IMG/VR virus record: IMGVR_UViG_3300023174_000039
Coordinates: 1 to 64,000 of that record
Length of the DNA: 64,000 bases
Reading direction: 5' to 3' (one strand)
Position numbers and translations under genes: made by a program. How positions within the stretch are numbered: position 1 is the first letter of the stretch; each line of letters opens with the position of its first letter. Positions 6,508 to 63,859 of the stretch are shown piece after piece. Under the pieces are notes generated by a model that was given only the letters and a program-made list of their open reading frames with translations, was not told the origin of the DNA and ran no database searches.

Positions 6508-7032
6508 ATGGCAGACTTAATGATCGACTTAGAAGGGCTTGCTACAGGCCCAGACACTACAATACTAACTATTGCGGCCCAGAGCTTTGACCCTTTTGGG
6601 CAAGGCCACTCTGGCCAGAGTTACTATGCCAGAGTCACACTAGAAAGCCAAGAAGATCGCGCTATTGATCAAGGCACAATTGATTGGTGGGCTACACAAC
6701 CTGCTGTGGTTCGAGACGAAGCATTCAATGAACAAGACCGCATCCCATTGGATCAAGCTCTAGATGGGTTAGGTCGGCTGATTTGGCACTCCAACAGAAT
6801 CTGGGCCCAAGGACCCACGTATGACATGAACATTCTGGAGCATGCCTACAAGAGCTATCGCAAGCCCTTGCCTTGGAAATACTACATGGTGCGTGATAGC
6901 CGTACGGTGTTTAGCTTGTGGCCTGATCAGCCTATCCCGCCCACCAGCCACCATGCCCTAGAAGACTGCCGCAGACAAATTGGCATGCTACAACACACAC
7001 TAAAACATCTTGGGGTTACTGCGCTGAAGTAG
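6508..7032 (+). CDS. DEDDh 3'-5' exonuclease (DexA/RNase AS-like)
   Basis: MIDLEGL, GPTYDM, RDSRT and HHALEDC motifs. Confidence 0.85.
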   Translation: MADLMIDLEGLATGPDTTILTIAAQSFDPFGQGHSGQSYYARVTLESQEDRAIDQGTIDWWATQPAVVRDEAFNEQDRIPLDQALDGLGRLIWHSNRIWAQGPTYDMNILEHAYKSYRKPLPWKYYMVRDSRTVFSLWPDQPIPPTSHHALEDCRRQIGMLQHTLKHLGVTALK

Positions 7033-8986
7033 GTTTAGGTCTTGACCAAGTACCACTGCCTGTCCACGGTAGCCTAAACGTAAATTCCTTACCAAATTCA
7101 ATTGGTGGATGGTCCTGACCGTCTATAAAAATCTCATGGTCAAAATCTGCAGTCCACTCACCACTGCTGTTGATGTTGAACTGATATCTGGCTCGATAGT
7201 AACTGTTTATTCTTGGCAAATTAAAAGCACCCAGTTCTTGTGTGTCATGTGCAGGGTCAAATTTTAAATCAAGTTCATACGGGCCCAACGCCAACCACAA
7301 CACACGAAGCAGCGGCCAGATTTCGTTGACCACAGTGACATTCAATGGATGGTCATCAATTTTAATAATGTTAAAATCAAACTGTTCATATGGTATATCT
7401 GTAATGATATTTTCAGGATCGTAACTGAGCGTGTAGTGTTCAGGCTTTTCCAGTCCTGGGCGCTCGTTCAGTGTTTCGTATGTTACACTGCGATTCTTAA
7501 TAAGATGATTGAGAATAACGTTGACAGACTTGTAGCGTATGAGACGTTGAAAAATAGTGTTGGTATAGTCGTCAGTTTTCCATTGATGTGTTAGATTGTG
7601 GTTGGAAATGCCAAATTTTGATCTTTCATAGTTCAGAGGAGTGTCCATGCCAATTTGGCAAGTGCCAAAACTACGCCCAAAAATATTACAATTACGTGTG
7701 CGCCACAACAAGGTCATGGTGTCAGCAACATCATTATATCCCTCGCCAGGAAATCCCACAAACCAATTTGTGTGTGACCGAATTCCTACAGTGGTAAAGT
7801 CTTTGAGATTTTGTTCTATATCATTGCGTTTGACATTCTTTTTCATGACGTCCAACACATGCTGGCTTCCTGACTCTACACCAAAACTCAGCATGTTGCA
7901 GCCACCGTTTTTGAGATCATTAATGTAGTCGAGATCCATGCGCCCGTCACATCTGGCGTACCCCATCCAACTCAGATGAATGTTTCGTTCAACCAATCCT
8001 TTTGCAAATGCACTTAGTTCTTTTAAATTGCCATTGATCAAACTGTCAATAAACCACACGCTGTCAATGCCCAAGGTTTTGTATTGGTGTTCTAATTCAT
8101 CCAGTATGTTGTTTGCTTGTCGGCCGCGGTATCTCCAAAATGTTGTTTCACTGCAAAACTGACATTTGGCCACACACCCGCGACTCAGTTCAGCACTTAC
8201 TCCATTTTGTTGATACAATGATAAATCTAAATCAGAGTAGTCTGGGTACGGCAAGCTGTCAAGATCAATACGTATGCTCTTGTCATGCACAAGGAATTTT
8301 TCAGTAACAGGAATGTTATTCTCAATCTTCTCCATCAAGTCCAAGAAAATTGCTTCGCCCTCTCCTACCACAATGTGGTCAATGATATCGGTGTTTTCTA
8401 TTTTTTCTTGAATAGCAGTTGGGCCGCCTGCTATAATAATAGTGTCGGGCAGCCTGCTACGAATTTGATTGATCATCCAGGTCGTGGCTTTGTTGCTGGT
8501 GGTAAAAATACTGAAGCCCATGACATCTGGTTTGAACGCCACAATCTTGTCAAGGTATTCATTCAGTATAGGTTCAATAAGAGGATGTACATCGGTGTAA
8601 TAACTGTCAGTGGTCCACACCCAGTCCTTGTATCCACTCCAGTACGCTTGATCTATTTTTGAATAACACACAGCATTGATATCGTATGCAACTGTTTCAA
8701 ATCCGCTATCTCGGCTGAGTGCAGTTATTCTAGCCAAATTGTAAGGAGGGATGTACGGAGCCCATTCAGGTAAAATAGCCAATGCCACACGAGTTTTTCG
8801 TGTCACTTGCCGATTGACCACTACCTGGGTTAGATTTTTTTGGGGCTTTGATCGGCCTGCACTGTCTAATTGCAATGCTTTGAGCATGGCCAAATCTCGA
8901 GCACCACCGTCGCTGTTGTTTACTATCTTGGTTAAATCAGGCTCAACTTTATCTGAAGTGGTCAATATATCAAATATTTTATTCAT
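7016..8986 (-). CDS. B12-binding domain radical SAM enzyme (class B methyltransferase-like)
   Basis: PDVMGFS and IIAGGP (B12-binding), SRGCVAKCQFC (CxxxCxxC), FGVESGSQHVL, VGFPGE. Confidence 0.9.
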   Translation of the reverse strand: MNKIFDILTTSDKVEPDLTKIVNNSDGGARDLAMLKALQLDSAGRSKPQKNLTQVVVNRQVTRKTRVALAILPEWAPYIPPYNLARITALSRDSGFETVAYDINAVCYSKIDQAYWSGYKDWVWTTDSYYTDVHPLIEPILNEYLDKIVAFKPDVMGFSIFTTSNKATTWMINQIRSRLPDTIIIAGGPTAIQEKIENTDIIDHIVVGEGEAIFLDLMEKIENNIPVTEKFLVHDKSIRIDLDSLPYPDYSDLDLSLYQQNGVSAELSRGCVAKCQFCSETTFWRYRGRQANNILDELEHQYKTLGIDSVWFIDSLINGNLKELSAFAKGLVERNIHLSWMGYARCDGRMDLDYINDLKNGGCNMLSFGVESGSQHVLDVMKKNVKRNDIEQNLKDFTTVGIRSHTNWFVGFPGEGYNDVADTMTLLWRTRNCNIFGRSFGTCQIGMDTPLNYERSKFGISNHNLTHQWKTDDYTNTIFQRLIRYKSVNVILNHLIKNRSVTYETLNERPGLEKPEHYTLSYDPENIITDIPYEQFDFNIIKIDDHPLNVTVVNEIWPLLRVLWLALGPYELDLKFDPAHDTQELGAFNLPRINSYYRARYQFNINSSGEWTADFDHEIFIDGQDHPPIEFGKEFTFRLPWTGSGTWSRPKPTSAQ

Positions 8987-8990
8987 AGTG

Positions 8991-8996
8991 TATTTA
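8991..8996 (-). promoter_or_regulatory. Late promoter TAAATA
   Basis: TAAATA 4 nt before the ATG at 8986. Confidence 0.65.
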
Positions 8997-9074
8997 CATC
9001 GTTGTCTCTAGACCATCAAATCAAACGGCTAATTGCCAGTTGATTTGTATTTTTGTTTGTGCTAATATACAACT

Positions 9075-13426: not shown

Positions 13427-13429
13427 TGA

Positions 13430-21370: not shown

Positions 21371-22516
21371 ATGTCTGATACTTTCTATTGTGCCGCACCT
21401 TGGCGTGGCCTACACATAAATCCCCGTGGTGATGTTAAAACTTGTTGTGCAGGCGATCCCAACATGCTGGGCAACTTGAACACCAACAACATTATTGAAA
21501 TACTCAACGGAGATCTACTGCAAGAAATTCGCGGTAGCATTGCACAAGGCAAGCCACACAAGTATTGCTCTAACTGCGTACAAGCCGAACGCTTTGGTGC
21601 CGACTCAGAACGCAAATGGCACAACGATCAGAACCAAGATTTAGATTATACGACTGCCGGATCACTGTACCACTATCCTGTTATAGTGGACGTGAGATGG
21701 AATACCACCTGTAACCTTTCATGTAACTACTGTAGTGAATGGGCCAGTTCAAAATGGTCCGCACTCAAAGGTATTCCATTCAAGTCCGGCAGTCGTCCCT
21801 ATTATGATGATGTGTGTGACTTCATTGCGGCGCATCACGAGCACATTCGAGATGTAGCACTTGTGGGCGGTGAGCCCTTGCTGTTACCAGAAAACGAACG
21901 ACTACTAGATGTCATTCCAGAAGATTGTACAGTAACCATCATTACCAACATGAATGTGGATCTTGACCGAAACAAGATCTTCAAGAAACTAGCACAACGT
22001 AAGAAAGTTGGCTGGAGCATGAGCTTTGACAACATTGACGACCGCTTTGAATATGTGCGATATGGCGGCGAGTGGTTACAAGTTGAAAACAACATTGCTA
22101 TAGTCAAAGATTTGTTTTCAAAAGGACACTGGGGCGGCATACATGCAGTGTACAACATCTACAATGCCACACGCATTACAGAATTCCGTGAATGGGCTGT
22201 GGCACGAGGTGTAACTGTACTCTGGCAAAACCTGTTTCAACCTGACTACCTTGATCCATTCTTGCATGGACCTGAAGTTGCTGAACTGGCAGCCGCCGAA
22301 ATTGAGCGATTCTATGCAACAGGACTTGCAACAGATGCAGAGCGCATGTTCTTTGACAATGCATTAAACACTTATCGTAATGTTAAACAAGAACGCCCAG
22401 GCATCACCGCCAAATTTAAACAACACATTGCAGAAATTGAAACAAAATATCATCCAGACAAGTCAGGTGAGTTTGTGAGATGCTGGCCTGAACTTGCGGC
22501 ATTATTAGATAATTAA
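21371..22516 (+). CDS. Radical SAM protein with N-terminal twitch-type Cys domain
   Basis: CAAPW..TCC..CSNC, CNLSCNYC and GGEPL; start at MSDTFYC, 5 nt after TAAATA. Confidence 0.9.
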   Translation: MSDTFYCAAPWRGLHINPRGDVKTCCAGDPNMLGNLNTNNIIEILNGDLLQEIRGSIAQGKPHKYCSNCVQAERFGADSERKWHNDQNQDLDYTTAGSLYHYPVIVDVRWNTTCNLSCNYCSEWASSKWSALKGIPFKSGSRPYYDDVCDFIAAHHEHIRDVALVGGEPLLLPENERLLDVIPEDCTVTIITNMNVDLDRNKIFKKLAQRKKVGWSMSFDNIDDRFEYVRYGGEWLQVENNIAIVKDLFSKGHWGGIHAVYNIYNATRITEFREWAVARGVTVLWQNLFQPDYLDPFLHGPEVAELAAAEIERFYATGLATDAERMFFDNALNTYRNVKQERPGITAKFKQHIAEIETKYHPDKSGEFVRCWPELAALLDN

Positions 22517-29081: not shown

Positions 29082-29347
29082 GCGAAGTAGTAGCAAGCGA
29101 AATTTGGGGTGAACTCAAACGTTTTGTAAACACCGTGGATCGTGCAGAAGCCGCAGAAACTGTGGTACAGATCTTGATGGACAATGATTCAGATGTTGAT
29201 GATATTCGTAGTGCTTTCAAAGGTGATTCAGATATCAAACGTGCGTTGACTGCATACCTTGACAATGACAAAGACTACATCGAAGAAGAAGATGCAGAAG
29301 AAGATGAAGACTTTGACGACTTTGACAAGGACGACTGGGAAAATTAA
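29078..29347 (+). CDS. Small protein with acidic C-terminal tail
   Basis: ATGA-coupled to uvsX; ends in a D/E run. Confidence 0.8.
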   Translation: MSEVVASEIWGELKRFVNTVDRAEAAETVVQILMDNDSDVDDIRSAFKGDSDIKRALTAYLDNDKDYIEEEDAEEDEDFDDFDKDDWEN

Positions 29348-30591
29348 TGTCCTTGACATATTTTCCAATCCGAACTGCAACAAGTTGTCAATTAAAATGG
29401 AATTGGACGGCATTGTACCTCAATGGCGGGTTCTCTCGAACTTGCCATCGTACTGCTGAAACACAATTAACTCCAGAAAATTTTAGTGATTTTCACAATA
29501 CTGAAGTTGTGTTAAGCGATCGTACAAGAATGTTGCAAGGCCTATGGCCAGAGAAAAGTTGTTCGTATTGTAAAAATATTGAAGAAGCAGGCGGAACAAG
29601 TGATCGATTGCGACAAATTGACAATCCAAATTTATCTCCGCCTGAACTTGTTGATGATCCTTCTGCAATTGTAGTAAGTCCCACGGTACTAGAAGTATTT
29701 TTTAATAATACATGCAACCTAGGATGCTTGTACTGCACACCCTCATTGAGTTCTGTGATAAACACTGAAAATCACAAGTTTGGTAACTTTGATCAAAACG
29801 GTGTTTCGTTGACTCCTGTAGACATACACTATAAGGATCTATCTCCACATTTTTGGCAATGGTTTCCTGACGGCTTTCCCAAGCTCAAACGATTTGGAGT
29901 GCTAGGTGGTGAACCGTTCTATCAAAAAGAGTTTGAAAAACTTTTAGACATGATAGAGCAACATCCCAATCCCAATTGCGAACTCAACATCATAACCAAT
30001 CTTATGGTATCTCCGGACAGGTTAAGTATGTTTGTTGAACGTTTTAAAAAACTGTTGCTGACAAAAAAAATAAAACGAGTTGATATAACGTGCAGTATAG
30101 ATTGCTGGGGACCACAACAAGAGTATGTGAGATGGGGAATTGATCTTGAGCAATGGCAACAGAATTTTGAATCTCTAATCAAGCACAAATGGTTGTACAT
30201 TAGTATAAATCAAACTATAACAGCGTTGACTATCAAGACCATGCCTGATTTGTTGCTAAAGTTAAAAGAATGGAACGCTATACGCCCAGTACATCATCAC
30301 TTTAGTGGCCCGTCGCCGACTCCGAGCTACTTTGATGCTGGCATATTAGGCGGCGACGAGTTTAAACATGACTTTGATCAAATATTATCCTTGATGCCAC
30401 AATCTACTGATGAAGATAAAATAACATACAACTACATGTTGGGTATAGCAAATGGCATCGTACAGTCCCGGATTAATCCTGATGAGATTAACAAATTGTT
30501 AACTTATCTTGACGAGAAGGATCGCCGACGTGGCACAGATTGGAAAATATTATTTCCGTGGTTAGTGGAGTATAAAAAATATGTGGTATAG
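29347..30591 (+). CDS. Radical SAM protein, twitch-type
   Basis: CQLKW..TCH..CSYC, CNLGCLYC and GGEPF. Confidence 0.9.
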   Translation: MSLTYFPIRTATSCQLKWNWTALYLNGGFSRTCHRTAETQLTPENFSDFHNTEVVLSDRTRMLQGLWPEKSCSYCKNIEEAGGTSDRLRQIDNPNLSPPELVDDPSAIVVSPTVLEVFFNNTCNLGCLYCTPSLSSVINTENHKFGNFDQNGVSLTPVDIHYKDLSPHFWQWFPDGFPKLKRFGVLGGEPFYQKEFEKLLDMIEQHPNPNCELNIITNLMVSPDRLSMFVERFKKLLLTKKIKRVDITCSIDCWGPQQEYVRWGIDLEQWQQNFESLIKHKWLYISINQTITALTIKTMPDLLLKLKEWNAIRPVHHHFSGPSPTPSYFDAGILGGDEFKHDFDQILSLMPQSTDEDKITYNYMLGIANGIVQSRINPDEINKLLTYLDEKDRRRGTDWKILFPWLVEYKKYVV

Positions 30592-31041: not shown

Positions 31042-32142
31042 ATGAGTTATCTATTTACAAGTGAAAGTGTGTCTGAAGGACACCCAGATAAAATAGCAGA
31101 CGCCATTAGCGATGCTGTATTAGATCTAGTTATGACCAAACAAGACACAGCATTGCGATGCGCATGCGAGACATTGGTTACTACCAATCGTGTCATAGTT
31201 GCAGGAGAATACAAAGGCATTTTACACGCCGAGGAAGTTGATTCTGCAGTTCGCAAAGTTATCAAAGATGTTGGGTACAAACAAGCAGGATTTAATTGGC
31301 AAACAGTAGAGATTACAAATTTATTGCATGGGCAAAGTGCTGACATTGCATTAGGAACTGACACCTTTGGCGCCGGAGATCAAGGATTGATGTTTGGATA
31401 TGCTTGCAATGAAACTGATGCACATATGCCTAGTGCAATTTATTGGAGCCACAAGATTGTAGAACAGCTTGCCAAGCTACGCAAAAACAATGACTTGCCT
31501 TGGTTAGGTCCAGATGCTAAGAGTCAGGTCACATTTGAATACAATGACGATGGCTCTCCTAAACGTATTGCTAAAGTGGTATGCTCTACGCAACATCACG
31601 AGTCAGTGGATATTGAGCAAGTTCAAATGTCTGTTGAAAGTGTGATTCGCAGTGTCTTACCGGAGAAATATGTTGACAATGCTACTGAGTTTTTTATTAA
31701 TCCTACTGGCCGTTTTGTTATTGGTGGCCCTGATGGTGATACAGGTCTCACCGGTCGTAAGATTATTGTTGATACTTATGGTGGGTATAGCCCTCATGGG
31801 GGCGGGGCTTTCTCAGGGAAAGATCCCACAAAGGTGGACCGTAGTGCCGCTTACATGATGCGCTATCTTGCCAAGAACATTGTAGCAAGTGGTCGAGCAG
31901 ATTGGGCTACAGTACAGATTAGTTATGCTATTGGTCTAGCACAGCCCATGAGCTTCTATGTAGAAACCGCAGACTTACAACAGAGTCGCGATCTAACCAA
32001 ATGGTTACAAGACAATGTTGATTTAACACCTCGTGGTATTATTGAACGTTTTAATTTGTTTAGGCCAATCTATAGTACAACAACCAATTACGGACACTTT
32101 GGCAAAGATTATTTGCCCTGGGAAAAAACAGACCTGTTCTAA
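31042..32142 (+). CDS. metK: S-adenosylmethionine synthetase
   Basis: FTSESVSEGHPDK, GAGDQG and GGGAFSGKD signatures. Confidence 0.98.
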   Translation: MSYLFTSESVSEGHPDKIADAISDAVLDLVMTKQDTALRCACETLVTTNRVIVAGEYKGILHAEEVDSAVRKVIKDVGYKQAGFNWQTVEITNLLHGQSADIALGTDTFGAGDQGLMFGYACNETDAHMPSAIYWSHKIVEQLAKLRKNNDLPWLGPDAKSQVTFEYNDDGSPKRIAKVVCSTQHHESVDIEQVQMSVESVIRSVLPEKYVDNATEFFINPTGRFVIGGPDGDTGLTGRKIIVDTYGGYSPHGGGAFSGKDPTKVDRSAAYMMRYLAKNIVASGRADWATVQISYAIGLAQPMSFYVETADLQQSRDLTKWLQDNVDLTPRGIIERFNLFRPIYSTTTNYGHFGKDYLPWEKTDLF

Positions 32143-38960: not shown

Positions 38961-39803
38961 ATGATTAAAAACATAGCATATTATCCTTTACAACGTGCTC
39001 TAAATGGCGGCCCTCCTATGAATGCCATGCTTACTGCTCTGCACAACGCTGGCATAGAAACACACGATCGTGGACTAGATTCTGACGCTGTGCTCATATG
39101 GTCAGCACTATGGTCTGGTAGAATGGCAGCCAACCAAGCAGTATATAGACATTATAGGGCACAAGGCAAGCCAGTAATCATCATTGACATTGGGGCACTA
39201 AATCGTGGCACAACATGGAAGGTTGCAGTGAACAACATCAATGCCAATGGTTATTATGGGCACTTAGACAACCTAGATTGGGATCGTCCCCGGAAGATGA
39301 ATCTAGTACTTGGCACTCCCACAAATACCAAATCTCACATTGTGATTGCGGCACAGCACACGCAAAGCGAACAATTGGCAGGAGTTGATCTTACTATGTG
39401 GATACATGCTCAAATACAATTGATAAAAAACAACACGGATAGACCCATACACATTAGACCACATCCCAGATGCAGTCTTAACACTACCAGTTTTGCTGGA
39501 GTCAAAATTGAGTCGCCCAGTAGAGTATCCAACACATACGACAGTTTTGATTTGGGATTGAATTGTCATGCCATTGTAAATTACAACTCGGGACCGGGCA
39601 TACAAGCAGCCATAGCAGGTGTTCGTCCCATAGTTGAAATGAGTAGTTTGGCATATCCTGTTGGGGTTGGCATTGCTGATATAGAAAAACCTTACACAAC
39701 TGACCGTGAATTGTGGCTCGCACAAATTAGTCATACTGAATACACAGTACCTGAATTAGAACAAGGCTTATGGCTAAAAAGAATAGAATCGGCACTGGCA
39801 TAA
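38961..39803 (+). CDS. Capsule-biosynthesis (KpsS/KpsC-like GT-B) protein, paralog 4
   Basis: IVIAAQ, IHIRPHP and VNYNSGPGIQAAIAG. Confidence 0.6.
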   Translation: MIKNIAYYPLQRALNGGPPMNAMLTALHNAGIETHDRGLDSDAVLIWSALWSGRMAANQAVYRHYRAQGKPVIIIDIGALNRGTTWKVAVNNINANGYYGHLDNLDWDRPRKMNLVLGTPTNTKSHIVIAAQHTQSEQLAGVDLTMWIHAQIQLIKNNTDRPIHIRPHPRCSLNTTSFAGVKIESPSRVSNTYDSFDLGLNCHAIVNYNSGPGIQAAIAGVRPIVEMSSLAYPVGVGIADIEKPYTTDRELWLAQISHTEYTVPELEQGLWLKRIESALA

Positions 39804-40507
39804 CTGATTGTGCCTGTGTGATACACAGCACCGGCTATGACTGGACCTATGTTGAACGACTGTACAACATGCTGGATCGTAACTTGCCCGGTGACATACG
39901 CTTTCATGTTTATACCGAACATGATCGTAGTGTGCCTCCTTACATGATCAAACACATACTAGAAGACTGGCCAGGCATTGCTGGTCCAAAGAAGTCATGG
40001 TGGCACAAGCTACAGGTGTTTAATCCTGAACATTATGAAGGCAATTTGCTTTACTTTGATCTTGACACAGTGATTGTTCGTGACGTAGGTTGGATTACTC
40101 AACTGGATCCCAATTACCTCTGGGGCATTAGAGATTTTAGGCACTTACAAAATCCCAGACTTAACACATTGAACTCCAGTGTAATGTGGTGGAATGTCAA
40201 ACAGTTTGGATGGGTATGGGACAAGTTTAAAACAGATGACATTGACAAAGTGTCAAGACAGTATCCTGGAGACCAAGATTACCTGTATGCAACACTTGGT
40301 CACAACAAAGTTCGGTATTTTGATGATGCACAATTAAAAAGTTGGCGTTGGCAGTGTTTTGATGGCGGATATGACTTTCAGTACAGAAAGCACAGAGCAC
40401 CGGGACAAGGTACCTTTATTGATGGTAATACTTCTGTTTTAGTATTTCATGGCAACCCTAAACCCCATAAAATTAACGATAAAGTAGTACAAGACCTTTG
40501 GAAGTAA
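39770..40507 (+). CDS. Glycosyltransferase (GT-A)
   Basis: YVERLYNM, WWHKLQVF, YFDLD, NSSVM, GDQ and VFHGNPKP. Confidence 0.85.
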   Translation: MAKKNRIGTGITDCACVIHSTGYDWTYVERLYNMLDRNLPGDIRFHVYTEHDRSVPPYMIKHILEDWPGIAGPKKSWWHKLQVFNPEHYEGNLLYFDLDTVIVRDVGWITQLDPNYLWGIRDFRHLQNPRLNTLNSSVMWWNVKQFGWVWDKFKTDDIDKVSRQYPGDQDYLYATLGHNKVRYFDDAQLKSWRWQCFDGGYDFQYRKHRAPGQGTFIDGNTSVLVFHGNPKPHKINDKVVQDLWK

Positions 40508-42497: not shown

Positions 42498-42531
42498 GAC
42501 AGGTACCCTTAAAAAAGGTACCTGTCTTTTT
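42498..42531 (+). terminator. Rho-independent terminator
   Basis: GACAGGTACC/GGTACCTGTC perfect stem followed by TTTTT. Confidence 0.88.
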
Positions 42532-42566
42532 GACTTTGTGACTGTGCTACTGTATAATCTTAAATA
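42530..42566 (+). promoter_or_regulatory. Tandem sigma70-type and late promoter
   Basis: TTGACT-N17-TATAAT, then TAAATA 42561-42566, 6 nt before the ATG. Confidence 0.75.
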
Positions 42567-42572: not shown

Positions 42573-43700
42573 ATGACTTTTTGCTATTCCCCTTGGTCCA
42601 ACATTGACATTAGTCCTCAAGGTGACCTCACGCCTTGTTGCAAATTTCAAATGTCCAAGTACAATGAGTCGTTTAATGTGCAAACGCAAACCTTGCCTGA
42701 GTATTTTGGCAGTGCCTTTTTGGCAGAAATCAAGCAAGAATTTGCACAAGGACAATGGCCACGTGGATGTGAACGGTGTCGTATTGAGGAAGAGAACAAC
42801 ATTGCCAGCAAGAGACAATTGGATTATGAACGCTGGCAACAACATTACCAACTGTATGATCTTGCCAGCAGTAAGTGTATCACCGCCAGCATTGCATTTG
42901 GAAACACCTGTAATCTAAAATGCATAACCTGCAGTCCTTACAGTAGCAGTAAATGGCATCAAGAACATCTAAAAATACACAATGTTGATATTGGACCTGT
43001 TAAATTTTACAGGAGTGATTTTGTAGAAAAGTTTATAGACCAGTCACCAGATGTTGTTCATTTGGACATACCCGGAGGCGAACCTTTCCTATCTGGTGTG
43101 CAAGAACAAAAACGCTTGTTGAATCATTATATAACAACAGGACAGGCCAAACATATTAGTTTACATTACACTACCAACGTAACGCTATTTCCTGATCAAG
43201 AGTGGTGGGATATTTGGCAGCATTTTGAGAACGTCGACATCCAACTCAGCATAGACGGAGTGGGCAACAGATATGAGTACATTAGATATCCGGCCAAATG
43301 GGCAGAAGTTGTTGATAACACTGCTCGGTACTTAGAACGGCACCAAGGCAATATCCAGCTTAGTGTAAGTCATACCGTGAGTGCCTACAACATTTATTAT
43401 CTTGATGAATTTTTTACATGGTGCAAACACATGGGATTGCCTGATCCGTGGCTGGGCCGAGTTCATAATCCCATGCACATGCGACCCACAGTATGGCCTA
43501 CTGCTGTCAGAAATCACATTGCTGAACATTTACAATCCAGCAGTTACACACATGTGCGCACCTGGGCACAACTGTTACAAAGCCAAGATGACAGCGAGAA
43601 GTTTGATAAATTTAAGACTTATCTGCTACAGCATGATCAATATAGAGGATTAAACTTTGCAGAAACGTTTCAGGAACTATCGGAGTTTTTAAATGTCTAG
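42573..43700 (+). CDS. Radical SAM protein, twitch-type
   Basis: CYSPW..PCC..CERC, CNLKCITC and GGEPF. Confidence 0.9.
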   Translation: MTFCYSPWSNIDISPQGDLTPCCKFQMSKYNESFNVQTQTLPEYFGSAFLAEIKQEFAQGQWPRGCERCRIEEENNIASKRQLDYERWQQHYQLYDLASSKCITASIAFGNTCNLKCITCSPYSSSKWHQEHLKIHNVDIGPVKFYRSDFVEKFIDQSPDVVHLDIPGGEPFLSGVQEQKRLLNHYITTGQAKHISLHYTTNVTLFPDQEWWDIWQHFENVDIQLSIDGVGNRYEYIRYPAKWAEVVDNTARYLERHQGNIQLSVSHTVSAYNIYYLDEFFTWCKHMGLPDPWLGRVHNPMHMRPTVWPTAVRNHIAEHLQSSSYTHVRTWAQLLQSQDDSEKFDKFKTYLLQHDQYRGLNFAETFQELSEFLNV

Positions 43701-45012
43701 TAGAAAAGACTATCCAATATATCAGGTGCTTGAAGAAAAGAGCAAGTTTTTTTGTCCTGCCAAGTGGACAGAGTTGTTCTTGTATCTCAATCATGGAACC
43801 AGTAATAGTTGTCATCATCCTATTCCACACAACATACCACAAGAGTTGCTGAGCAATCCGGCAGTGTTACACAACACCCCGCACAAGTTAAAAATGCAAC
43901 AGCTCATGATAGACGGAGTCAGGCCAGACGAATGTCACATGTGTTGGCATATAGAAGATGCAGATCCTGACGCTGTGAGTGACCGCATTACCAAAAGTCA
44001 GCACTGGCAAGATAGAATTGCAGGACTTGCAGTTGATCCAGAATATGTGCCGCCATTCATTGAAGTGGTATTTGACAACTATTGTAACCTAACCTGTAGC
44101 TATTGCGACTCCGGGCAAAGCTCATCCTGGGCTGCCAAAGTACACAAACAACCGTTGCACTTGCTCACCGACTATCGTGAGTTGTATTCCAAAATTCATA
44201 TTGCACCCGGAACAACCAAGCAACAGTATCTTGATGCCTGGCTAACCTGGTGGCCAACCATACGTGATCAAGTACAGGTACTCAAAATCAGTGGCGGCGA
44301 GCCATTGATGAGCAAAAACTTTTGGCGCTTTGTTGATGAACTTGGAACAGCACCCAACTTGTCTATTGCCATCAACAGTAATTTTTCTGTGGACCACGAG
44401 TTGGTAAAACGCTTTGCAGCCTATGCACCAAACTTTCGTAAAGTAACAATATCTGCTAGCATTGATGCAACTGAAAGCATTGCAGAATACGCCAGGCAAG
44501 GGCTAAACTACCAGCAATTTTTACACAATGTGCATTATTGGTGCTCAAGTACTCCGGACAATTGTTTCCTCAAACTACAAAGCACAGTCAACGTATTAAA
44601 TGTATGGGGGCTAACTGATAAGTTTGAATTAAACGCACACCTGCGACAACTATATCCTGCTCGTGTGTTGGATTTTTATAGCACAATTGTGCGAGCACCA
44701 GAGTTTCAGTCAATCTTGATACTGCCCAATAATGTCAGACACCAACTTGGTATCCAGATTCAAACTTGGATTAAGCACAATAGTCAGCTGTTGTCATCTG
44801 CGGAAAAGGTACTGGCAAACAAAACTGCAAGCTACCTGGTAAACAACCCGGAACCCATGCACAAGTTTGAGCAACGCCAATTAGAGCTTGACTTTGTGAC
44901 ATTTTTACTGTATTATAATCAAACAAGCAAACTACAATATCAACATGTATACCCTAAAGAATTCTTAGAATGGATAGAAACAATTGAAACAATGCACAAT
45001 ACAAATACGTGA
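43693..45012 (+). CDS. Radical SAM protein, twitch-type
   Basis: CPAKW..SCHH..CHMC, CNLTCSYC and GGEPL. Confidence 0.9.
   Translation: MSSRKDYPIYQVLEEKSKFFCPAKWTELFLYLNHGTSNSCHHPIPHNIPQELLSNPAVLHNTPHKLKMQQLMIDGVRPDECHMCWHIEDADPDAVSDRITKSQHWQDRIAGLAVDPEYVPPFIEVVFDNYCNLTCSYCDSGQSSSWAAKVHKQPLHLLTDYRELYSKIHIAPGTTKQQYLDAWLTWWPTIRDQVQVLKISGGEPLMSKNFWRFVDELGTAPNLSIAINSNFSVDHELVKRFAAYAPNFRKVTISASIDATESIAEYARQGLNYQQFLHNVHYWCSSTPDNCFLKLQSTVNVLNVWGLTDKFELNAHLRQLYPARVLDFYSTIVRAPEFQSILILPNNVRHQLGIQIQTWIKHNSQLLSSAEKVLANKTASYLVNNPEPMHKFEQRQLELDFVTFLLYYNQTSKLQYQHVYPKEFLEWIETIETMHNTNT
44888..44920 (+). repeat. Second copy of the 42530 promoter sequence, embedded in the radical SAM coding region
   Basis: TTGACTTTGTGAC-N5-TACTGTAT is shared with 42530-42555. 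Confidence 0.7.
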
Positions 45013-47700: not shown

Positions 47701-48370
47701 GTTTACCTGTGAGTTTTGTAAAAAAGAGTTTGCACGTGAAAGCTCCATTGCAGTACACATGTGCGAGCCCAAGCGCAGGCGCATGGAACAAAGTGAACGT
47801 GGGGTACAACTGGGCTTTCAAGCCTACATCAAGTTTTACGAACTGGCACAAGGTAGTGCCAAACTAAAAACATTTGAGGACTTTTGTGACTCACCTTACT
47901 ACCGAGCATTTGTCAAGTTTGGCCGCTATTGTGTAAACACACGAGTCATTAATCCTGCACAGTTTATGTCATGGTTATTGAAAAACAACAAGAAAATTGA
48001 CCACTGGTGCAGTGACAAAATCTACACTGAGTACTTGTTGTTTTATCTACGAGTAGAAGCTGTAGCAGATGCCCTGGCTCGTGCAATAGAGTACAGTATT
48101 GACTGGAGTGAAAAGACCACGCACCCTGCATATGATTGCATGCGTTATGGTAATATCAATTTGCTATGTCATGCTGTGACAACAGGACGTATATCGCCCT
48201 GGGTGATTTATAATTCAGCATCTGGACAAGAGTTCTTGAACAACCTGGACTCTTCTCAGATTGCAATGATCTGGCCCTACATTGATAGTGATGCGTGGCA
48301 AAAGAAATTCCATGACTACTCAGCGGATCAAGAGTATGCCAAAGAGATTTTGAGGCAAGCAGGATGGTGA
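47681..48370 (+). CDS. C2H2-like zinc finger-containing hypothetical protein
   Basis: FTCEFCKKEF....HMC at the N-terminus. Confidence 0.7.
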   Translation: MDETPSKFTCEFCKKEFARESSIAVHMCEPKRRRMEQSERGVQLGFQAYIKFYELAQGSAKLKTFEDFCDSPYYRAFVKFGRYCVNTRVINPAQFMSWLLKNNKKIDHWCSDKIYTEYLLFYLRVEAVADALARAIEYSIDWSEKTTHPAYDCMRYGNINLLCHAVTTGRISPWVIYNSASGQEFLNNLDSSQIAMIWPYIDSDAWQKKFHDYSADQEYAKEILRQAGW

Positions 48371-49866
48371 CTAGAAAACTTTGCCTTGGCAACAATACCG
48401 AACTTACTGATCAACAGACAAGAAAACTAGCAGCCGAGCAAGGCACAATTTGTCACGGGCTGTTGAGCGAGCTAGACGGTGAAATCGCAAACTACTCAGT
48501 TGACGGGTTTTATCATAGTAGCGTGTATGATATAATGCCAGGAAGATTGCGAGAAATTTGTTTAGATATTGGGCATGTAATAGTATTGCCGCAAACAAAG
48601 TCAGATTATCAAGATCCAGAATCATTTTATCAAACAGTTCAATTGTGTAAACAGCTAGAGACAACCATCACTGTGGAATGGTTAGATCCAGAAATTAAAA
48701 ATACAAATCAATTTTTTGAACAGCTGGTCAATACCAATAGCAGTTTTTGCATCTATCCCTTTATTGAGTTATTGGTACAGAATGGTTCTACTACTGTATG
48801 TTGTAGATCATCTAATCCGGTAACAGAACTAAGTCAACTGAAAGACTACGGAACTGATCCAGGGTACACTGCTATTAGAGATAAAATGTTACAAGGTGTA
48901 CGTGTTCCAGAACATTGTTCTGCATGCTATAAACTAGAAAATGTTGGGATCACGAGTCCCAGGAAACAAGAAACAATTGAATGGGCAAACAGATTAGGAC
49001 TCAATGGCCTAGAAGATTTGCAACAAATTACACAACCTGTGTATTACGAAATTAGACCAAGCAACATATGCAATTTGCAATGCAGGATGTGCTCTCCGAC
49101 TTACAGTCATCTTATTGATCAAGAATACCAACAGTTGGGATTATCGGCACCTATAAAGATCGACCACACTGGATTTGATATTGTGGATATCAACAATGTT
49201 AACAAACTCTATGTGGCTGGAGGAGAACCAATGGCCATGCCTGATTTTTATGAATTTGTAGACCAATGTATTGATACTCATAACACTGATTTTGAATTTG
49301 TTATAAACACAAATGGTACCAAGTTAAGCGATCGGTTTAAACGTCAACTACAGCACTTCTCTCGAATGCAGTTTATTGTAAGCATTGACGGGGCTGATCG
49401 ACTAAATCACTATATTAGATGGCCCAGTAACTGGAGCACAATAGTAGACAATGTCACTTACTTGGTCACAAACAATTACTATGTGACATTCAACGTTACT
49501 GTGAGCATGTACAATGTACTGGATTTAAATAATCTGTTTAGATTTTTTGAACAACATTGGCCGAGGCAGGCAGTGCATTTACAATTGGCGGGATCTCGAG
49601 ATGATTATCTGTCAGCATTTAACCACCCGTCAAGCGACTTGGTAGTACATATGTTGACACAATCTCAACAGACTGCCACCTATCGTGACAATGCATTGGT
49701 AGCAAACTTTGTTGACACAATGCTAGCCCATTACAAAAATAACCATCAATGTGATTTGGTAAAACTTAAAAAATTCTTTGAGATAAATGACAAGTTAGAT
49801 CAATCAAGGAACATATATCTTGAGGACTACTTGCCCGATCTGTCTAACGCCAGGAGCATGATATGA
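48364..49866 (+). CDS. Radical SAM protein, twitch-type, with extra N-terminal domain
   Basis: CIYPF..VCC..CSAC, CNLQCRMC and GGEPM. Confidence 0.9.
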   Translation: MVTRKLCLGNNTELTDQQTRKLAAEQGTICHGLLSELDGEIANYSVDGFYHSSVYDIMPGRLREICLDIGHVIVLPQTKSDYQDPESFYQTVQLCKQLETTITVEWLDPEIKNTNQFFEQLVNTNSSFCIYPFIELLVQNGSTTVCCRSSNPVTELSQLKDYGTDPGYTAIRDKMLQGVRVPEHCSACYKLENVGITSPRKQETIEWANRLGLNGLEDLQQITQPVYYEIRPSNICNLQCRMCSPTYSHLIDQEYQQLGLSAPIKIDHTGFDIVDINNVNKLYVAGGEPMAMPDFYEFVDQCIDTHNTDFEFVINTNGTKLSDRFKRQLQHFSRMQFIVSIDGADRLNHYIRWPSNWSTIVDNVTYLVTNNYYVTFNVTVSMYNVLDLNNLFRFFEQHWPRQAVHLQLAGSRDDYLSAFNHPSSDLVVHMLTQSQQTATYRDNALVANFVDTMLAHYKNNHQCDLVKLKKFFEINDKLDQSRNIYLEDYLPDLSNARSMI

Positions 49867-61909: not shown

Positions 61910-61938
61910 TTGACGGTAGGCGTTATATATAGTATAAT
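61910..61938 (+). promoter_or_regulatory. Sigma70-type early promoter
   Basis: TTGACG-N17-TATAAT. Confidence 0.85.
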
Positions 61939-62268: not shown

Positions 62269-62269
62269 T

Positions 62270-62662
62270 ATGGCATACTCACAAAAAGTTGTAGACCACT
62301 ACGAAAACCCACGCAACGTGGGTTCCTTCTCCAAGGACGACACTGACATTGGCACAGGCATGGTAGGTGCTCCTGCCTGCGGTGATGTAATGAAATTGCA
62401 GATCAAAGTTGTAGATGGAATAATTACAGATGCACGATTTAAAACATATGGCTGCGGGTCAGCCATTGCATCAAGTTCATTGATCACTGAAATGGTCAAA
62501 GGCATGACACTAGATAATGCTTCACAAATTAAAAACTCAGAAATTGCTGAAGAACTAGCACTACCTCCTGTAAAAATACACTGTAGTATTCTTGCAGAAG
62601 ATGCTATCAAAGCCGCAGTTGAAGACTACAGAAAGAAACATGACACAACGCATCTTAATTGA
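62270..62662 (+). CDS. iscU: Fe-S cluster scaffold IscU
   Basis: MAYSQKVVDHYENPRNVG, GAPACGDVM, TYGCGSA and LPPVKIHCS. Confidence 0.98.
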   Translation: MAYSQKVVDHYENPRNVGSFSKDDTDIGTGMVGAPACGDVMKLQIKVVDGIITDARFKTYGCGSAIASSSLITEMVKGMTLDNASQIKNSEIAEELALPPVKIHCSILAEDAIKAAVEDYRKKHDTTHLN

Positions 62663-63539
62663 CAAACTGGAATTTTATGTTACAAACGTTTGTAACTTGA
62701 CCTGCAACGGGTGTAACCGCTACAATAATTATAAATTTGCCGGATGGCAAAGTTGGGACGAATATGGCCCCATACTAGAACGCTGGGCAGAAAAAATTGA
62801 TATCCGCCATCCTGTTATTCTTGGCGGCGAGCCATTGCTCAATCCAGAAATCAACAAGTGGGTGGAAGGACTAAAACGCTTGTGGCCCGACCATTCCGGC
62901 GTACAAATTCAGAGCAACGGCACACGAATTGACAAGGTCAAGGGTTTGTATGAAGCTCTGGGCAACGGGCAAGGACACTGGATTGGTATCAGCATACACA
63001 ATCCCGACGACAAAGAAGAAATCTTTTCACGCATTAGAAACTTCTTGACAGCACCCATTACAGAAACCAGTGATCCCAATCATCCCATTGGTTCAGACTT
63101 TCAGTTTACTGACGTAAACAAAAACTATGTGCATGCCTGGATGAGCAACAAGTTTGTACAAAGTAATATTTTAGAATTGCCCAATGGAAGATTTGGACTG
63201 TACAACAGCGATCCTGTCAAGGCACATGACAATTGTGCCTTTGCTAGATTTAAAAACTATCACATGATCCGTGGCAAGATCTACAAGTGCGGCCCTGCTG
63301 CCTTGATGCCAGAATTTGATGAGCAGTATCAATTTGATATCTCGGACGAAGATCGATTGTTGATGAAAGGTTACAAGCCCTTGGCCATTGACGAGTTTGA
63401 CACACGTGGTGCTGAGTTCTTGGGCAATATTGACAATGTGATTGATCAATGCAAATTTTGCCCAGAATCATATGACTACAAACCTATTACTTTCACCAAC
63501 TTGAAAAAGAACTGGAAGAAAGATGATGTTGTAGCATGA
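62640..63539 (+). CDS. Radical SAM protein with C-terminal Cys cluster
   Basis: CNLTCNGC and GGEPLL; C..KC..CKFC at the C-terminus. Confidence 0.9.
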   Translation: MTQRILIDKLEFYVTNVCNLTCNGCNRYNNYKFAGWQSWDEYGPILERWAEKIDIRHPVILGGEPLLNPEINKWVEGLKRLWPDHSGVQIQSNGTRIDKVKGLYEALGNGQGHWIGISIHNPDDKEEIFSRIRNFLTAPITETSDPNHPIGSDFQFTDVNKNYVHAWMSNKFVQSNILELPNGRFGLYNSDPVKAHDNCAFARFKNYHMIRGKIYKCGPAALMPEFDEQYQFDISDEDRLLMKGYKPLAIDEFDTRGAEFLGNIDNVIDQCKFCPESYDYKPITFTNLKKNWKKDDVVA

Positions 63540-63859
63540 TCTCTGTAACAGATATTGCAGCCAATAAAATCTTAAAGAGCATTGCCAAACGCGGCCGAGG
63601 GCAAGGCATTCAAGTAGGTGTTAGAACTACAGGTTGCTCAGGCCTGGCCTACGTGCTAGAATATGTAGACAACCCCAACTTACATTGTGTTAGACACTAC
63701 GATAGCAATGGGGTTAGGATATTTGTAGATCCCAAGAACATACCTTATCTTGACGGCATGATTATCGATTTCAAAAGAAATGGCCTCAATGAAGGCTTTG
63801 AATTTATCAACAAAAATGAACGTGACCGCTGTGGTTGCGGAGAATCTTTTCGAGTGTAA
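63536..63859 (+). CDS. iscA: A-type Fe-S carrier IscA
   Basis: TTGCSGLAY and CGCGESF. Confidence 0.97.
   Translation: MISVTDIAANKILKSIAKRGRGQGIQVGVRTTGCSGLAYVLEYVDNPNLHCVRHYDSNGVRIFVDPKNIPYLDGMIIDFKRNGLNEGFEFINKNERDRCGCGESFRV

What the first reader, a model, noticed from the sequence alone, without database searches (positions are those of the whole stretch)
7016..63859. Self-provisioned radical SAM system: seven rSAM enzymes plus phage MetK, IscU and IscA
Seen: seven ORFs with intact CxxxCxxC motifs (7016-, 21371, 29347, 42573, 43693, 48364, 62640), SAM synthetase (31042), and IscU/IscA directly flanking one rSAM gene. Established: rSAM enzymes need SAM and [4Fe-4S] clusters, and twitch/SPASM enzymes often modify peptides, proteins or sugars. 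Five share an unusual N-terminal twitch arrangement (C-x2-[PK]-[WF]..C[CH]..CxxC) yet are highly diverged, and three rSAM loci sit directly behind late promoters. Inference: the phage supplies its own cofactors for a late-stage radical chemistry pathway, perhaps tailoring virion glycans or proteins. None resembles NrdG, QueE or MoaA in context. This is the best candidate for an undescribed system in the window.
Basis: partly seen in the sequence, partly recalled or inferred. Interest (0 to 1): 0.85.

Follow-up and report, generated by a model that had tools for sequence, protein, structure and literature searches.

The report
Phage radical SAM genes with cofactor-supply genes
A 332-kb uncultured jumbo phage carries seven real radical SAM enzyme genes, five from a very large uncharacterised family, plus its own SAM synthetase and iron-sulfur assembly proteins; they are scattered, independently varying cassettes rather than one system, and their clearest neighbours are sugar-chain genes.

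Summary
Exactly seven of 74 genes carry CxxxCxxC, and all seven hit radical SAM (rSAM) models. Five (21371, 29347, 42573, 43693, 48364) pass the curated cut-off of NCBIfam NF033640, the N-terminal-twitch rSAM family. One (7016-8986, minus strand) is a B12-binding class B rSAM. One (62640) is an orphan. MetK, IscU and IscA are canonical.

- The parts are not one unit. They span 57 kb among T4-like core genes, and in related phage contigs the rSAM cassettes come and go while IscU-IscA and MetK stay.
- MetK's conserved partner is a sugar nucleotidyltransferase, not an rSAM.
- A T4-late-like TAAATA motif does precede three rSAM genes, but sigma70-type promoters precede 42573 and the IscU operon, so expression is not purely late.
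- Three twitch rSAMs flank a glycan island: a nucleotidyltransferase, GT8, four WbbB/KpsC-like transferases and three methyltransferases. This favours sugar tailoring, which remains unproven.

The family is huge (over 10,000 clusters at 50% identity). It forms tandem arrays of up to eight genes in phages and seven in Bdellovibrionota, and I found no characterised member and no solved structure beyond the shared rSAM core. Co-occurrence of Fe-S assembly genes with many rSAMs in T4-like phages was already published in 2017.

The parts
7016..8986 (-). Class B (B12-binding) radical SAM enzyme, 656 aa
   Evidence: PF02310 41.5 bits and PF04055 58.7 bits, both above cut-off. The best NCBIfam hits (PhpK, ladderane, RiPP C-methyltransferase) are all far below their cut-offs. 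Homologues sit next to twitch-rSAM arrays in other phage contigs (L078, L053, L050, L061). TAAATA lies 4 nt before the ATG.
21371..22516 (+). N-terminal-twitch rSAM paralog 'rSAM2', between a non-specific endonuclease (20522) and the large terminase (22521)
   Evidence: NF033640 207 bits against 170. Pfam SPASM matches residues 18-80 and Radical_SAM residues 123-270 of the ORF from 21338. TAAATA at 21360 lies 5 nt before the ATG at 21371. Orthologues are present in L178, L181 and L195.
29347..30591 (+). N-terminal-twitch rSAM paralog 'rSAM3', after UvsX
   Evidence: NF033640 230 bits. It is present in some related contigs and absent in others at the identical site.
31042..32142 (+). MetK, S-adenosylmethionine synthetase
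   Evidence: TIGR01034 477 bits against 309; all three Pfam MetK domains hit. At least 509 relatives in viral contigs. It lies next to the 32163 homologue in 40 of 80 loci.
32163..40507 (.). Glycan island: RfaE-II-like nucleotidyltransferase + cupin (32163), GT8 (32915), four paralogous WbbB/KpsC-like transferases (33597, 34582, 37346-, 38961), three SAM methyltransferases (35484-, 36038-, 36706- FkbM), an unknown gene (38146-) and a glycosyltransferase (39770)
   Evidence: Family hits from Pfam, NCBIfam and PHROGs. The four unknowns are one family. AF2 model pLDDT 92.9. Best Foldseek matches are the beta-Kdo transferases WbbB, KpsC and KrkA (E 1e-7, TM about 0.5).
42530..42558 (+). Sigma70-type promoter (TTGACT-N17-TATAAT) in front of rSAM4, preceded by a terminator-like hairpin at about 42497-42530 and overlapped by TAAATA at 42561
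42573..43700 (+). N-terminal-twitch rSAM paralog 'rSAM4', the paralog with positionally conserved orthologues in 38 of the 80 fetched phage loci
   Evidence: NF033640 314 bits. Orthologues at 47-96% identity in 38 loci (L001-L038). dN/dS 0.07-0.11. AF2 pLDDT 94. It is embedded in the glycan cluster in L030-L045.
43693..45012 (+). N-terminal-twitch rSAM paralog 'rSAM5', overlapping rSAM4 and UvsW
   Evidence: NF033640 241 bits. Present in only six of the rSAM4-bearing loci (L001, L002, L012, L018, L019, L024). dN/dS 0.08-0.09.
48364..49866 (+). N-terminal-twitch rSAM paralog 'rSAM6' with a 125-aa N-terminal extension
   Evidence: NF033640 252 bits over residues 126-495. No orthologue at this site in relatives that cover the flanking genes.
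61910..61938 (+). Sigma70-type promoter in front of the 61957-IscU-rSAM7-IscA operon
62270..62662 (+). IscU Fe-S scaffold
   Evidence: TIGR01999 220 bits against 192. The catalytic Cys/Asp/Cys/His-Cys residues and LPPVK are visible. At least 600 relatives in viral contigs.
62640..63539 (+). Orphan rSAM 'rSAM7' between IscU and IscA
   Evidence: PF04055 48.3 bits. No NCBIfam family reaches its cut-off. CNLTCNGC motif plus a C-terminal CxxC. An orthologue lies between IscU and IscA only in L081 and beside IscU in L148 and L158.
63536..63859 (+). IscA-type A-type Fe-S carrier
   Evidence: TIGR00049 89 bits against 59; TIGR02011 127 against 151. Three cysteines conserved. It directly follows IscU in 78 of 80 related loci.

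Best explanation
The window is the first 64 kb of a 331,654-bp uncultured jumbo phage contig whose UvsX is 62-68% identical to those of jumbo isolates such as Atu_ph07, Phosso, CBB and GAP32.

Shown:
- It carries seven rSAM genes as separate accessory cassettes inserted between conserved structural and replication genes. Five are deep paralogs of the NF033640 family, in which the twitch (half-SPASM) auxiliary-cluster domain sits before the rSAM core. One is a class B B12-rSAM and one is an orphan.
- The phage lineage also carries a near-constant IscU-IscA pair and a MetK.

Inferred:
- Each twitch enzyme needs two [4Fe-4S] clusters and consumes SAM. The phage IscU scaffold and IscA carrier, working with the host cysteine desulfurase and chaperones, and MetK raise the supply of clusters and SAM during infection. 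MetK serves the three adjacent class I methyltransferases at least as much as the rSAMs.
- The twitch rSAMs most likely perform radical tailoring of sugars, such as oxidation, epimerisation, deoxygenation or decarboxylation. The sugars would be made and transferred by the neighbouring phage glycan island. The product would decorate either the virion or the infected cell's envelope.
- Different paralogs do different steps or take different substrates, which would explain their ancient divergence and their cassette-like gain and loss.
For: - Identity of the parts.
- Source contig and lineage.
- Dispersed, cassette-like behaviour: rSAM4 is positionally conserved (orthologues in 38 of the 80 fetched loci), while rSAM5, rSAM3, rSAM2 and rSAM6 are variably present and other twitch rSAMs are inserted at other sites.
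- Ancient paralogy: 21-25% identity. The five fall in five deep branches, each nearest to members of other phages' arrays.
- Function retained: invariant or near-invariant cluster cysteines and the GGE motif; dN/dS 0.07-0.11.
- Glycan link in this lineage: rSAM3 and rSAM4/5 flank the 32163-40507 island. In L030-L045 the rSAM4 orthologue sits inside the rearranged island, away from UvsW. Four island genes fold like WbbB/KpsC Kdo transferases.
- Glycan link elsewhere: the one annotated bacterial example examined (a Methylomagnum plasmid) lies in a locus with several GTs, a polyprenyl synthetase and an ABC transporter. Distant phage arrays lie with a carbamoyltransferase, a DegT aminotransferase, a sugar epimerase, proteins with a GDS-motif N-terminus, and B12-rSAMs.
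- Fe-S link: rSAM7 lies between IscU and IscA here and in L081. In 5 of 56 relatives a twitch rSAM starts within 30 nt of the IscA stop.
- Prior proposal of the Fe-S supply idea: PMC5332604.
Against: - No substrate has been tested and no family member is characterised.
- The PDB has no structure beyond the rSAM core (TM about 0.4).
- In distant phage arrays classic sugar-nucleotide genes are rare (DegT in 2 of 35 loci, epimerase in 1 of 35). The commonest partners are unannotated families and an Asp/Asn beta-hydroxylase-like protein (9-22 of 35), which points towards proteins.
- A Paenibacillus member lies in what looks like an ACP/ketosynthase locus, judged by eye.
- IscU/IscA and MetK are not closer to rSAMs than a single-copy gene would be by chance in 20-kb windows. 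They persist irrespective of local rSAM content, so dedicated provisioning is not shown.
- No electron donor (flavodoxin or ferredoxin) and no cysteine desulfurase was found in the window.
Confidence: 0.5

Rival explanations
1. The twitch rSAMs modify proteins or peptides, for example tail fibres or other virion proteins, through crosslinks, epimerisation or Cys/Ser oxidation. Each paralog would handle a different site or target.
For: - The nearest structures and secondary NCBIfam hits are peptide or protein modifiers (anSME, CteB, SkfB, PapB, WgkB), though only over the core.
- An Asp/Asn beta-hydroxylase-like gene co-occurs with distant arrays in 9-22 of 35 loci.
- rSAM cassettes were reported in the tail-fibre-rich host recognition cluster of pelagimyophages (PMC7029224).
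- TAAATA late-type motifs precede three rSAM genes, as they do structural genes.
Against: - No RiPP recognition element was seen: the N-terminus is the twitch domain itself.
- I did not look systematically for short precursor ORFs, and none stood out next to the genes.
- In this lineage the conserved neighbours are glycan genes.
Confidence: 0.2
2. IscU, IscA and MetK are general auxiliary metabolic or takeover genes and are not dedicated to the rSAMs. They might keep host Fe-S and SAM pools up, feed class I methyltransferases and DNA methylation, or counter SAM-linked defences. Their presence with the rSAMs would then be lineage history.
For: - IscU-IscA are adjacent in 78 of 80 loci regardless of rSAM content.
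- MetK pairs with the nucleotidyltransferase/cupin gene even in contigs sharing nothing else with the window, and it sits upstream of three methyltransferases.
- MetK is common in unrelated phages without these rSAMs, for example Streptococcus prophages.
- Cultured phages with twitch rSAM arrays (K566, RsoM2USA) do not appear among the tblastn IscU matches.
Against: - Jumbo isolates with the closest UvsX (Atu_ph07, Phosso, CBB, GAP32) do not appear among the records matching the twitch rSAM or IscU, and none is among the listed MetK matches. At clade level, therefore, the traits travel together.
- An rSAM is inserted exactly between IscU and IscA, and twitch rSAMs abut IscA in 5 of 56 relatives.
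- At least 12 [4Fe-4S] clusters per set of phage enzymes is a real extra demand (inference).
Confidence: 0.35
3. The rSAMs act on nucleotides or DNA, either in hypermodification or in making or destroying a signalling or antiviral nucleotide. This would fit their position among replication genes.
For: - They lie between gp32/UvsX, UvsW and primase/helicase genes, and rSAM4 shares a sigma70-type promoter unit with UvsW.
- There are weak core similarities to viperin-like enzymes.
- rSAM2 follows a non-specific endonuclease.
Against: - Accessory genes are interspersed everywhere in this T4-like window, so position is weak evidence.
- In L030-L045 the rSAM4 orthologue leaves UvsW and stays with glycan genes.
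- Viperin, QueE and NrdG model scores are far below cut-off.
- No base-modification genes were found in the window.
Confidence: 0.1
4. They are ordinary housekeeping rSAMs (NrdG, QueE, MoaA, lipoyl or biotin synthase) picked up from the host.
For: Only generic rSAM-core similarity.
Against: - MoaA scores at most 35 bits against a cut-off of 284, QueE at most 34 against 260, and NrdG at most 21 against 131.
- The N-terminal twitch architecture and the family's phage-wide expansion argue against it.
Confidence: 0.02

Closest known systems
NCBIfam NF033640, 'twitch domain-containing radical SAM protein' (N_Twi_rSAM)
   Same: Five window genes score above its curated cut-off over the full length. 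They share the N-terminal four-cysteine domain followed by CNLxCxxC.
   Different: The family is only a sequence definition. I found no characterised member or paper on it. The window's five copies are 21-25% identical to each other.
SPASM/twitch radical SAM enzymes with solved structures (anSME, CteB, SkfB, BlsE, DesII, viperin)
   Same: A partial-TIM-barrel rSAM core with an auxiliary Fe-S domain. These are the best Foldseek and PDB-sequence matches.
   Different: Only the core aligns (TM about 0.4, about 210-250 columns). In the Pfam matches of the two window copies that hit SPASM, that domain lies before the Radical_SAM domain; in the solved enzymes it lies C-terminal, which I state from memory. 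No close solved structure exists.
T4-like marine viral genomes with Fe-S assembly genes plus many rSAMs (Nishimura et al. 2017, PMC5332604), and rSAM cassettes in pelagimyophage variable regions (Zaragoza-Solas et al. 2020, PMC7029224)
   Same: An A-type carrier and/or IscU co-encoded with up to 12 rSAM genes in one T4-like genome. Cassette-like gain and loss. Neighbouring GT8 and LPS-type genes.
   Different: Here the host phage is a 332-kb jumbo phage whose UvsX is closest to Atu_ph07/CBB-type isolates. It also has MetK. Those papers did not define the twitch family or its arrays.
Cultured phages with the same fold: Vibrio phages KVP40, phi-pp2, K566, K567 and D479, and Ralstonia phage RsoM2USA
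   Same: BFVD models of the KVP40 and phi-pp2 'MoaA/NifB/PqqE family' proteins match the rSAM4 model over its full length (TM 0.59-0.69). K566 has four family members clustered together.
   Different: Sequence identity is about 16-22%. None of these phages appears among the tblastn IscU matches. Their function is also unknown.
Bacterial ISC machinery (IscU, IscA) and MetK
   Same: Canonical sequences with all the functional residues I checked.
   Different: Only the scaffold and carrier are phage-encoded here. No IscS, HscBA, ferredoxin or CyaY was found in the window.

Membership tests
Radical SAM superfamily (PF04055) | CxxxCxxC cluster motif and a significant match to the core model | tested here: met
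   The motif occurs in exactly seven genes. PF04055 E-values run from 1e-15 to 9e-6. Five are above the gathering score. Two are just below it but above the NF033640 cut-off. The GGE motif is conserved.
NF033640 N_Twi_rSAM | Whole-protein score of at least 170 bits | tested here: met
   Scores are 207 (21338), 230 (29347), 314 (42573), 241 (43693) and 252 (48364). Gene 62592 scores 30 and is not a member.
NF033640 N_Twi_rSAM | Twitch (half-SPASM) domain with conserved cysteines placed N-terminal to the rSAM core | tested here: met
   Pfam SPASM matches residues 18-80 and 4-69, ahead of Radical_SAM, in two copies. C4 and C66 are invariant and C23 and C69 at least 90% conserved in 73 sequences. 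Cluster binding itself is not testable here.
Class B (cobalamin-dependent) radical SAM | An N-terminal B12-binding domain plus the rSAM core | tested here: met
   In 7016-8986(-), PF02310 scores 41.5 against 32.1 and PF04055 scores 58.7 against 29.5. No specific subfamily cut-off is reached. Cobalamin use was not tested.
IscU (TIGR01999) | Score at or above the cut-off, plus the three Cys, Asp and His cluster ligands and the LPPVK chaperone site | tested here: met
   220 bits against 192. The residues are visible in the translation.
IscA (TIGR02011 equivalog) and A-type carrier (TIGR00049) | Score at or above the cut-off, plus three conserved cysteines | tested here: inconclusive
   The equivalog scores 127 against 151 (not met). 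The subfamily scores 89 against 59 (met). The cysteines are present. It is best called an A-type carrier of the IscA/SufA kind.
MetK (TIGR01034) | Score at or above the cut-off, with all three domains | tested here: met
   477 bits against 309. The N, M and C domains all hit.
A single co-inherited gene system (operon or cassette) | Components contiguous or co-transcribed, and gained or lost together in relatives | tested here: not met
   The components are spread over 57 kb with several promoters. rSAM cassettes vary while IscU-IscA and MetK persist. Whole-genome covariation could not be tested.
Housekeeping rSAMs NrdG, QueE and MoaA | Score at or above the equivalog cut-off | tested here: not met
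   All scores are below 36 bits, against cut-offs of 131-284.
RiPP maturase rSAMs | A recognition element (RRE) and an adjacent precursor peptide gene | tested here: inconclusive
   No RRE-type domain was reported by Pfam or NCBIfam, and the N-terminus is the twitch domain. No systematic search for short precursor ORFs was made.

The most novel reading that the evidence does not exclude
The N-terminal-twitch rSAMs are a functionally new enzyme class that works as a shuffled, combinatorial radical tailoring kit for cell-surface or virion glycans. Large phages and predatory Bdellovibrionota would exchange it, each paralog would install a different modification, and phage-encoded IscU, IscA and MetK would keep it running in the infected cell.
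Probability: 0.25. Interest if true: 0.8.

Novelty: new member of a known kind. Interest (0 to 1): 0.55.

Why it matters
Radical SAM enzymes carry out chemistry that few other enzymes can. This family has more than 10,000 clusters at 50% identity, is concentrated in phages, forms arrays of up to eight paralogs, and has no known substrate. That makes it one of the larger unexplored blocks of radical enzymology.

If the enzymes tailor glycans on virions or host envelopes, they would bear on host recognition, superinfection exclusion and the diversity of marine and freshwater phages. They would also supply new carbohydrate-modifying catalysts.

The window offers a compact test case: three paralogs sit next to a defined glycan island, with phage Fe-S and SAM supply genes available for co-expression.

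Tried and rejected
- Megablast of 22 kb against isolate phages found no match.
- tblastn of rSAM2 against isolate phages found no match. rSAM4 gave only five weak records.
- Literature searches for 'N-terminal twitch' and for the PGAP product name found nothing about this family.
- PDB sequence searches found only weak core hits. The isolated twitch domain gave nothing meaningful. The similarity in cysteine spacing to BtrN that I recalled therefore could not be checked and is not used.
I repeated it with a subfamily alignment whose pattern CNLKCRMC biases which taxa are found.
- An exact-product look-up of one array gene failed, probably because of the start-codon choice.
- I first concluded there was no late promoter, because strict TATAAATA is absent before the rSAMs. 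I reversed this after finding the enriched TAAATA core.
- I suspected that rSAM7 belongs with the small rSAM family seen beside distant arrays. BLASTP shows no significant similarity.
- I looked for a twitch rSAM after IscA at the window's end, as in L081. The ORF there is something else, possibly a nuclease, judged by eye only.
Several small window ORFs and the commonest array-associated families (312, 309 and 453 aa) stay unannotated.

Full report
**What the window is**

The window equals positions 1-64000 of IMG/VR contig IMGVR_UViG_3300023174_000039 (331,654 bp). The MetK locus fetched from that contig is 100% identical and its contig coordinates match the window coordinates. There is no near-identical isolate. 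The UvsX protein is 62-68% identical to those of jumbo phages Phosso, Vibrio 2.275.O, Atu_ph07, CBB and GAP32.

The gene content is that of a distant T4 relative:
- gp15-like tail sheath stabiliser and a 1140-aa tail sheath;
- T4-type large terminase;
- gp32, UvsX, UvsW and endonuclease VII;
- a Toprim primase and a DnaB-like helicase.

**Checking the observation**

All seven hit Pfam Radical_SAM.

- Five genes (ORFs starting at 21338/21371, 29347, 42573, 43693 and 48364) exceed the curated cut-off of NCBIfam NF033640, 'twitch domain-containing radical SAM protein', with 207-314 bits against 170.
- In two of them Pfam places a SPASM-type domain at the N-terminus, ahead of the core.
- They are 21-25% identical to each other.
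- Across 73 diverse family members, the radical SAM cysteine triad, a GGE motif and two of the four N-terminal cysteines are invariant. The other two N-terminal cysteines are conserved in at least 90% of sequences.
- 7016-8986 (minus strand) is a B12-binding class B rSAM with no subfamily assignment.
- 62592/62640-63539 is a generic rSAM.
- MetK, IscU and an IscA-type carrier are canonical, including the IscU ligands and the LPPVK motif.
- None of the seven approaches the NrdG, QueE or MoaA cut-offs.

**Promoters**

Strict T4 late promoters (TATAAATA) occur four times and never before an rSAM. The core TAAATA is rare, at 36 copies on both strands. Fourteen copies lie within 40 nt upstream of gene starts, against 0.7 expected. 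They include the tail sheath and other structural genes.

TAAATA lies 4-6 nt before the ATGs of the class B rSAM, of rSAM2 (if ATG 21371 is the start) and of rSAM4.

A near-consensus sigma70-type promoter (TTGAC-N16-19-TATAAT) occurs seven times against 0.25 expected. One stands directly before rSAM4 and one before the 61957-IscU-rSAM7-IscA operon. Expression limited to the late phase is therefore not supported. The Fe-S genes look early, and rSAM4/5 probably both early and late. All timing here is inference from motifs.

**Is it one system?**

No. The parts sit in at least five places across 57 kb among core genes.

- In 80 IMG/VR loci fetched with the twitch alignment, rSAM4 has positionally conserved orthologues in 38 (47-96% identity). 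rSAM5 follows it in only six of these loci. rSAM6 has no orthologue at its site. Other twitch rSAMs are inserted after UvsW or before the helicase in other contigs.
- In 80 loci fetched with IscU, IscA directly follows IscU in 78. An rSAM7 orthologue lies between them only in L081.
- In 80 loci fetched with MetK, the gene before or after MetK is the homologue of 32163 in 40, even in contigs that share nothing else with the window. rSAM3 is present in about half of the close relatives at the identical site.

So the rSAM genes behave as mobile cassettes, while IscU-IscA and MetK are lineage-wide.

At clade level the traits do coincide. The jumbo isolates with the closest UvsX do not appear among the records matching the twitch rSAM or IscU, and none is among the listed MetK matches. 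Cultured phages that carry twitch rSAMs (K566, RsoM2USA) do not appear among the IscU matches. In 5 of 56 relatives a twitch rSAM starts within 30 nt of the IscA stop. I could not test whole-genome covariation, because only 20-kb pieces of contigs can be fetched.

**The twitch family at large**

- A profile of 73 phage members finds 10,086 representative clusters (50% identity) at E<1e-30 and 30,220 at E<1e-10. Many are two- or three-fold fusions.
- In the fetched viral loci, 176 members fall into 72 clusters at 50% identity. They form tandem arrays of up to eight genes (L062), seven (L056, L061, L063) or six (L048).
- A high-confidence AlphaFold model of rSAM4 (pLDDT 94) matches PDB entries only over the rSAM core: anSME, CteB, SkfB, viperins, DesII and BlsE, at TM about 0.4.
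- The same model matches predicted structures of many uncultured-phage proteins over the full length, and, more distantly, the 'MoaA/NifB/PqqE family' proteins of Vibrio phages KVP40 and phi-pp2. phi-pp2, a close KVP40 relative, lists three such genes. Vibrio phage K566 has four clustered members.
- In one-genome-per-species bacterial and archaeal contigs, about 28 of 43 strong hits are Bdellovibrionota. One chromosome has arrays of seven and five. The scan pattern biases this sample.
- A quick tree puts the five window paralogs in five deep branches, each nearest to members of other phages' arrays. It needs at least 23 phage/bacterium switches. This is a FastTree with long branches and is indicative only.
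- rSAM4 and rSAM5 are under purifying selection: dN/dS is 0.07-0.11, against 0.02-0.03 for UvsW and 0.07-0.13 for the AAA ATPase encoded just upstream of rSAM4.

**What they probably do**

The strongest contextual signal in this lineage is a glycan island between MetK and rSAM4. It contains:
- an RfaE-domain-II-like nucleotidyltransferase fused to a mannose-6-phosphate-isomerase-type cupin;
- a GT8;
- a PHROG glycosyltransferase;
- three SAM methyltransferases, including an FkbM type;
- four paralogs of an unannotated family.

The model of that unannotated family (pLDDT 92.9) best matches the beta-Kdo transferases WbbB, KpsC and KrkA.

In the more distant relatives L030-L045 the gene order is rearranged. 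The rSAM4 orthologue stays inside this island rather than next to UvsW. A PGAP-annotated bacterial member on a Methylomagnum plasmid lies among several glycosyltransferases, a polyprenyl synthetase, an AsnB-type amidotransferase and an ABC transporter. Distant phage arrays include carbamoyltransferases, a DegT aminotransferase, a sugar epimerase, proteins with a GDS-motif N-terminus, class B rSAMs and 2OG oxygenases.

From general knowledge, solved twitch/SPASM enzymes that act on sugars (BtrN, BlsE) do oxidation or decarboxylation. I therefore favour radical tailoring of sugars or glycans.

The case is not closed:
- In distant arrays the commonest partners are unannotated families and an Asp/Asn beta-hydroxylase-like protein. 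Classic sugar genes are infrequent.
- The nearest structures are protein modifiers.
- A Paenibacillus member sits in what looks, by eye, like an acyl-carrier/ketosynthase locus.

Protein modification and, less likely, nucleotide chemistry remain open.

**Cofactor supply**

Five twitch enzymes with two clusters each, plus two more rSAMs, need at least twelve [4Fe-4S] clusters per enzyme set and stoichiometric SAM (inference). A phage IscU scaffold and an A-type carrier would have to work with the host's IscS and chaperones; the retained LPPVK site fits this. Neither a desulfurase nor an electron donor was found in the window.

MetK stands at the head of the glycan and methyltransferase island, so it is at least as likely to feed ordinary methylation.

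The provisioning idea is reasonable but not new. Nishimura et al. 2017 described T4-like environmental genomes with an A-type carrier and/or IscU plus up to 12 rSAM genes. They suggested that the assembly proteins serve virally encoded Fe-S proteins (PMC5332604). Zaragoza-Solas et al. 2020 saw rSAM cassettes come and go in pelagimyophage variable regions rich in GT8 and LPS-type genes (PMC7029224).

**Verdict**

This is a real, well-observed feature. The 'single self-provisioned late pathway' reading is only partly right. The window is a new, MetK-bearing jumbo-phage example of a published pattern. It is built mainly from a catalogued but functionally unknown rSAM family whose size, arrays and phage/predator distribution make it worth experimental attention.

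Noticed in passing
window 8991, 9937, 9998, 16100, 20512, 21360, 24790, 32152, 42561, 51607: TAAATA sits only 4-7 nt before start codons that lack a Shine-Dalgarno sequence, while other genes in the window have clear AGGAG sites. If TAAATA is the late promoter, these genes would give leaderless or near-leaderless late mRNAs.
   Followed up: partly
window 3853-3881, 4186-4214, 4349-4376, 40815-40843, 41259-41287, 42530-42558, 61910-61938: Seven near-consensus sigma70-type promoters are present, several with a TGCTATAAT extended -10, against 0.25 expected by chance. They probably mark early transcription units.
   Followed up: partly
window 33597-34592, 34582-35511, 37346-38149(-), 38961-39803: Four paralogs of a family with no significant Pfam or PHROG hit (only a sub-threshold DUF6716 match for 37346). 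Their model resembles the retaining beta-Kdo transferases WbbB, KpsC and KrkA. The family is multi-copy in related phage contigs too.
   Followed up: yes
window 31042-32918; loci L188, L189, L197, L200, L201, L203, L205 and others: MetK next to an RfaE-II-like nucleotidyltransferase/cupin fusion is a conserved gene pair in many viral contigs that otherwise share nothing with the window. The reason for this pairing is unexplained.
   Followed up: partly
L273 (7 copies), L261 (5), L251 (7); Bdellovibrionales chromosome OZ220490.1: Tandem arrays of the same twitch rSAM family occur in predatory Bdellovibrionota, which make up about 28 of 43 strong bacterial hits. In L273 some copies look like recent duplicates, and an AsnB-type amidotransferase follows the array. 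The search pattern biases the taxon sample.
   Followed up: partly
proteins P0121-P0151, P0131 (1203 aa), P0159 (1466 aa): Many metagenomic proteins are fusions of two or three complete twitch-rSAM units in one polypeptide.
   Followed up: no
window 24067-24792: An HNH/NUMOD3 endonuclease ORF overlaps the 3' end of the large terminase gene. It looks like a homing-endonuclease insertion. It is absent from related MetK-centred loci such as L171, L178 and L181.
   Followed up: no
window 10004-13426: The tail sheath ORF is 1140 aa, far longer than I recall for T4 gp18 (about 660 aa). Only the C-terminal 100 residues hit the sheath model.
   Followed up: no
window 48364-48738: rSAM6 has a 125-residue N-terminal extension before the twitch domain, with no detected homology.
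   Followed up: no
window 63853-64000: An ORF running off the window's end follows IscA. By eye its N-terminus resembles PD-(D/E)XK or Cas4-like nucleases; this was not tested. In relatives L081, L083, L129, L131 and L148 a twitch rSAM occupies this position instead.
   Followed up: partly
L268 (Paenibacillus sp.) 5935-14076: A bacterial twitch rSAM sits among what look by eye like acyl carrier proteins, ketosynthases, an SDR and an AMP-ligase. If so, the family is not restricted to glycan loci.
   Followed up: no
L062 12425-13213, L048 9287-10810, L063 2366-4255 and 11801-12538: Proteins with an N-terminal GDS(F/L) motif typical of SGNH hydrolases recur next to distant phage rSAM arrays (14-15 of 35 loci after iterative search). 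The one example I scanned (L062 12425-13213) gave no Pfam hit.
   Followed up: partly
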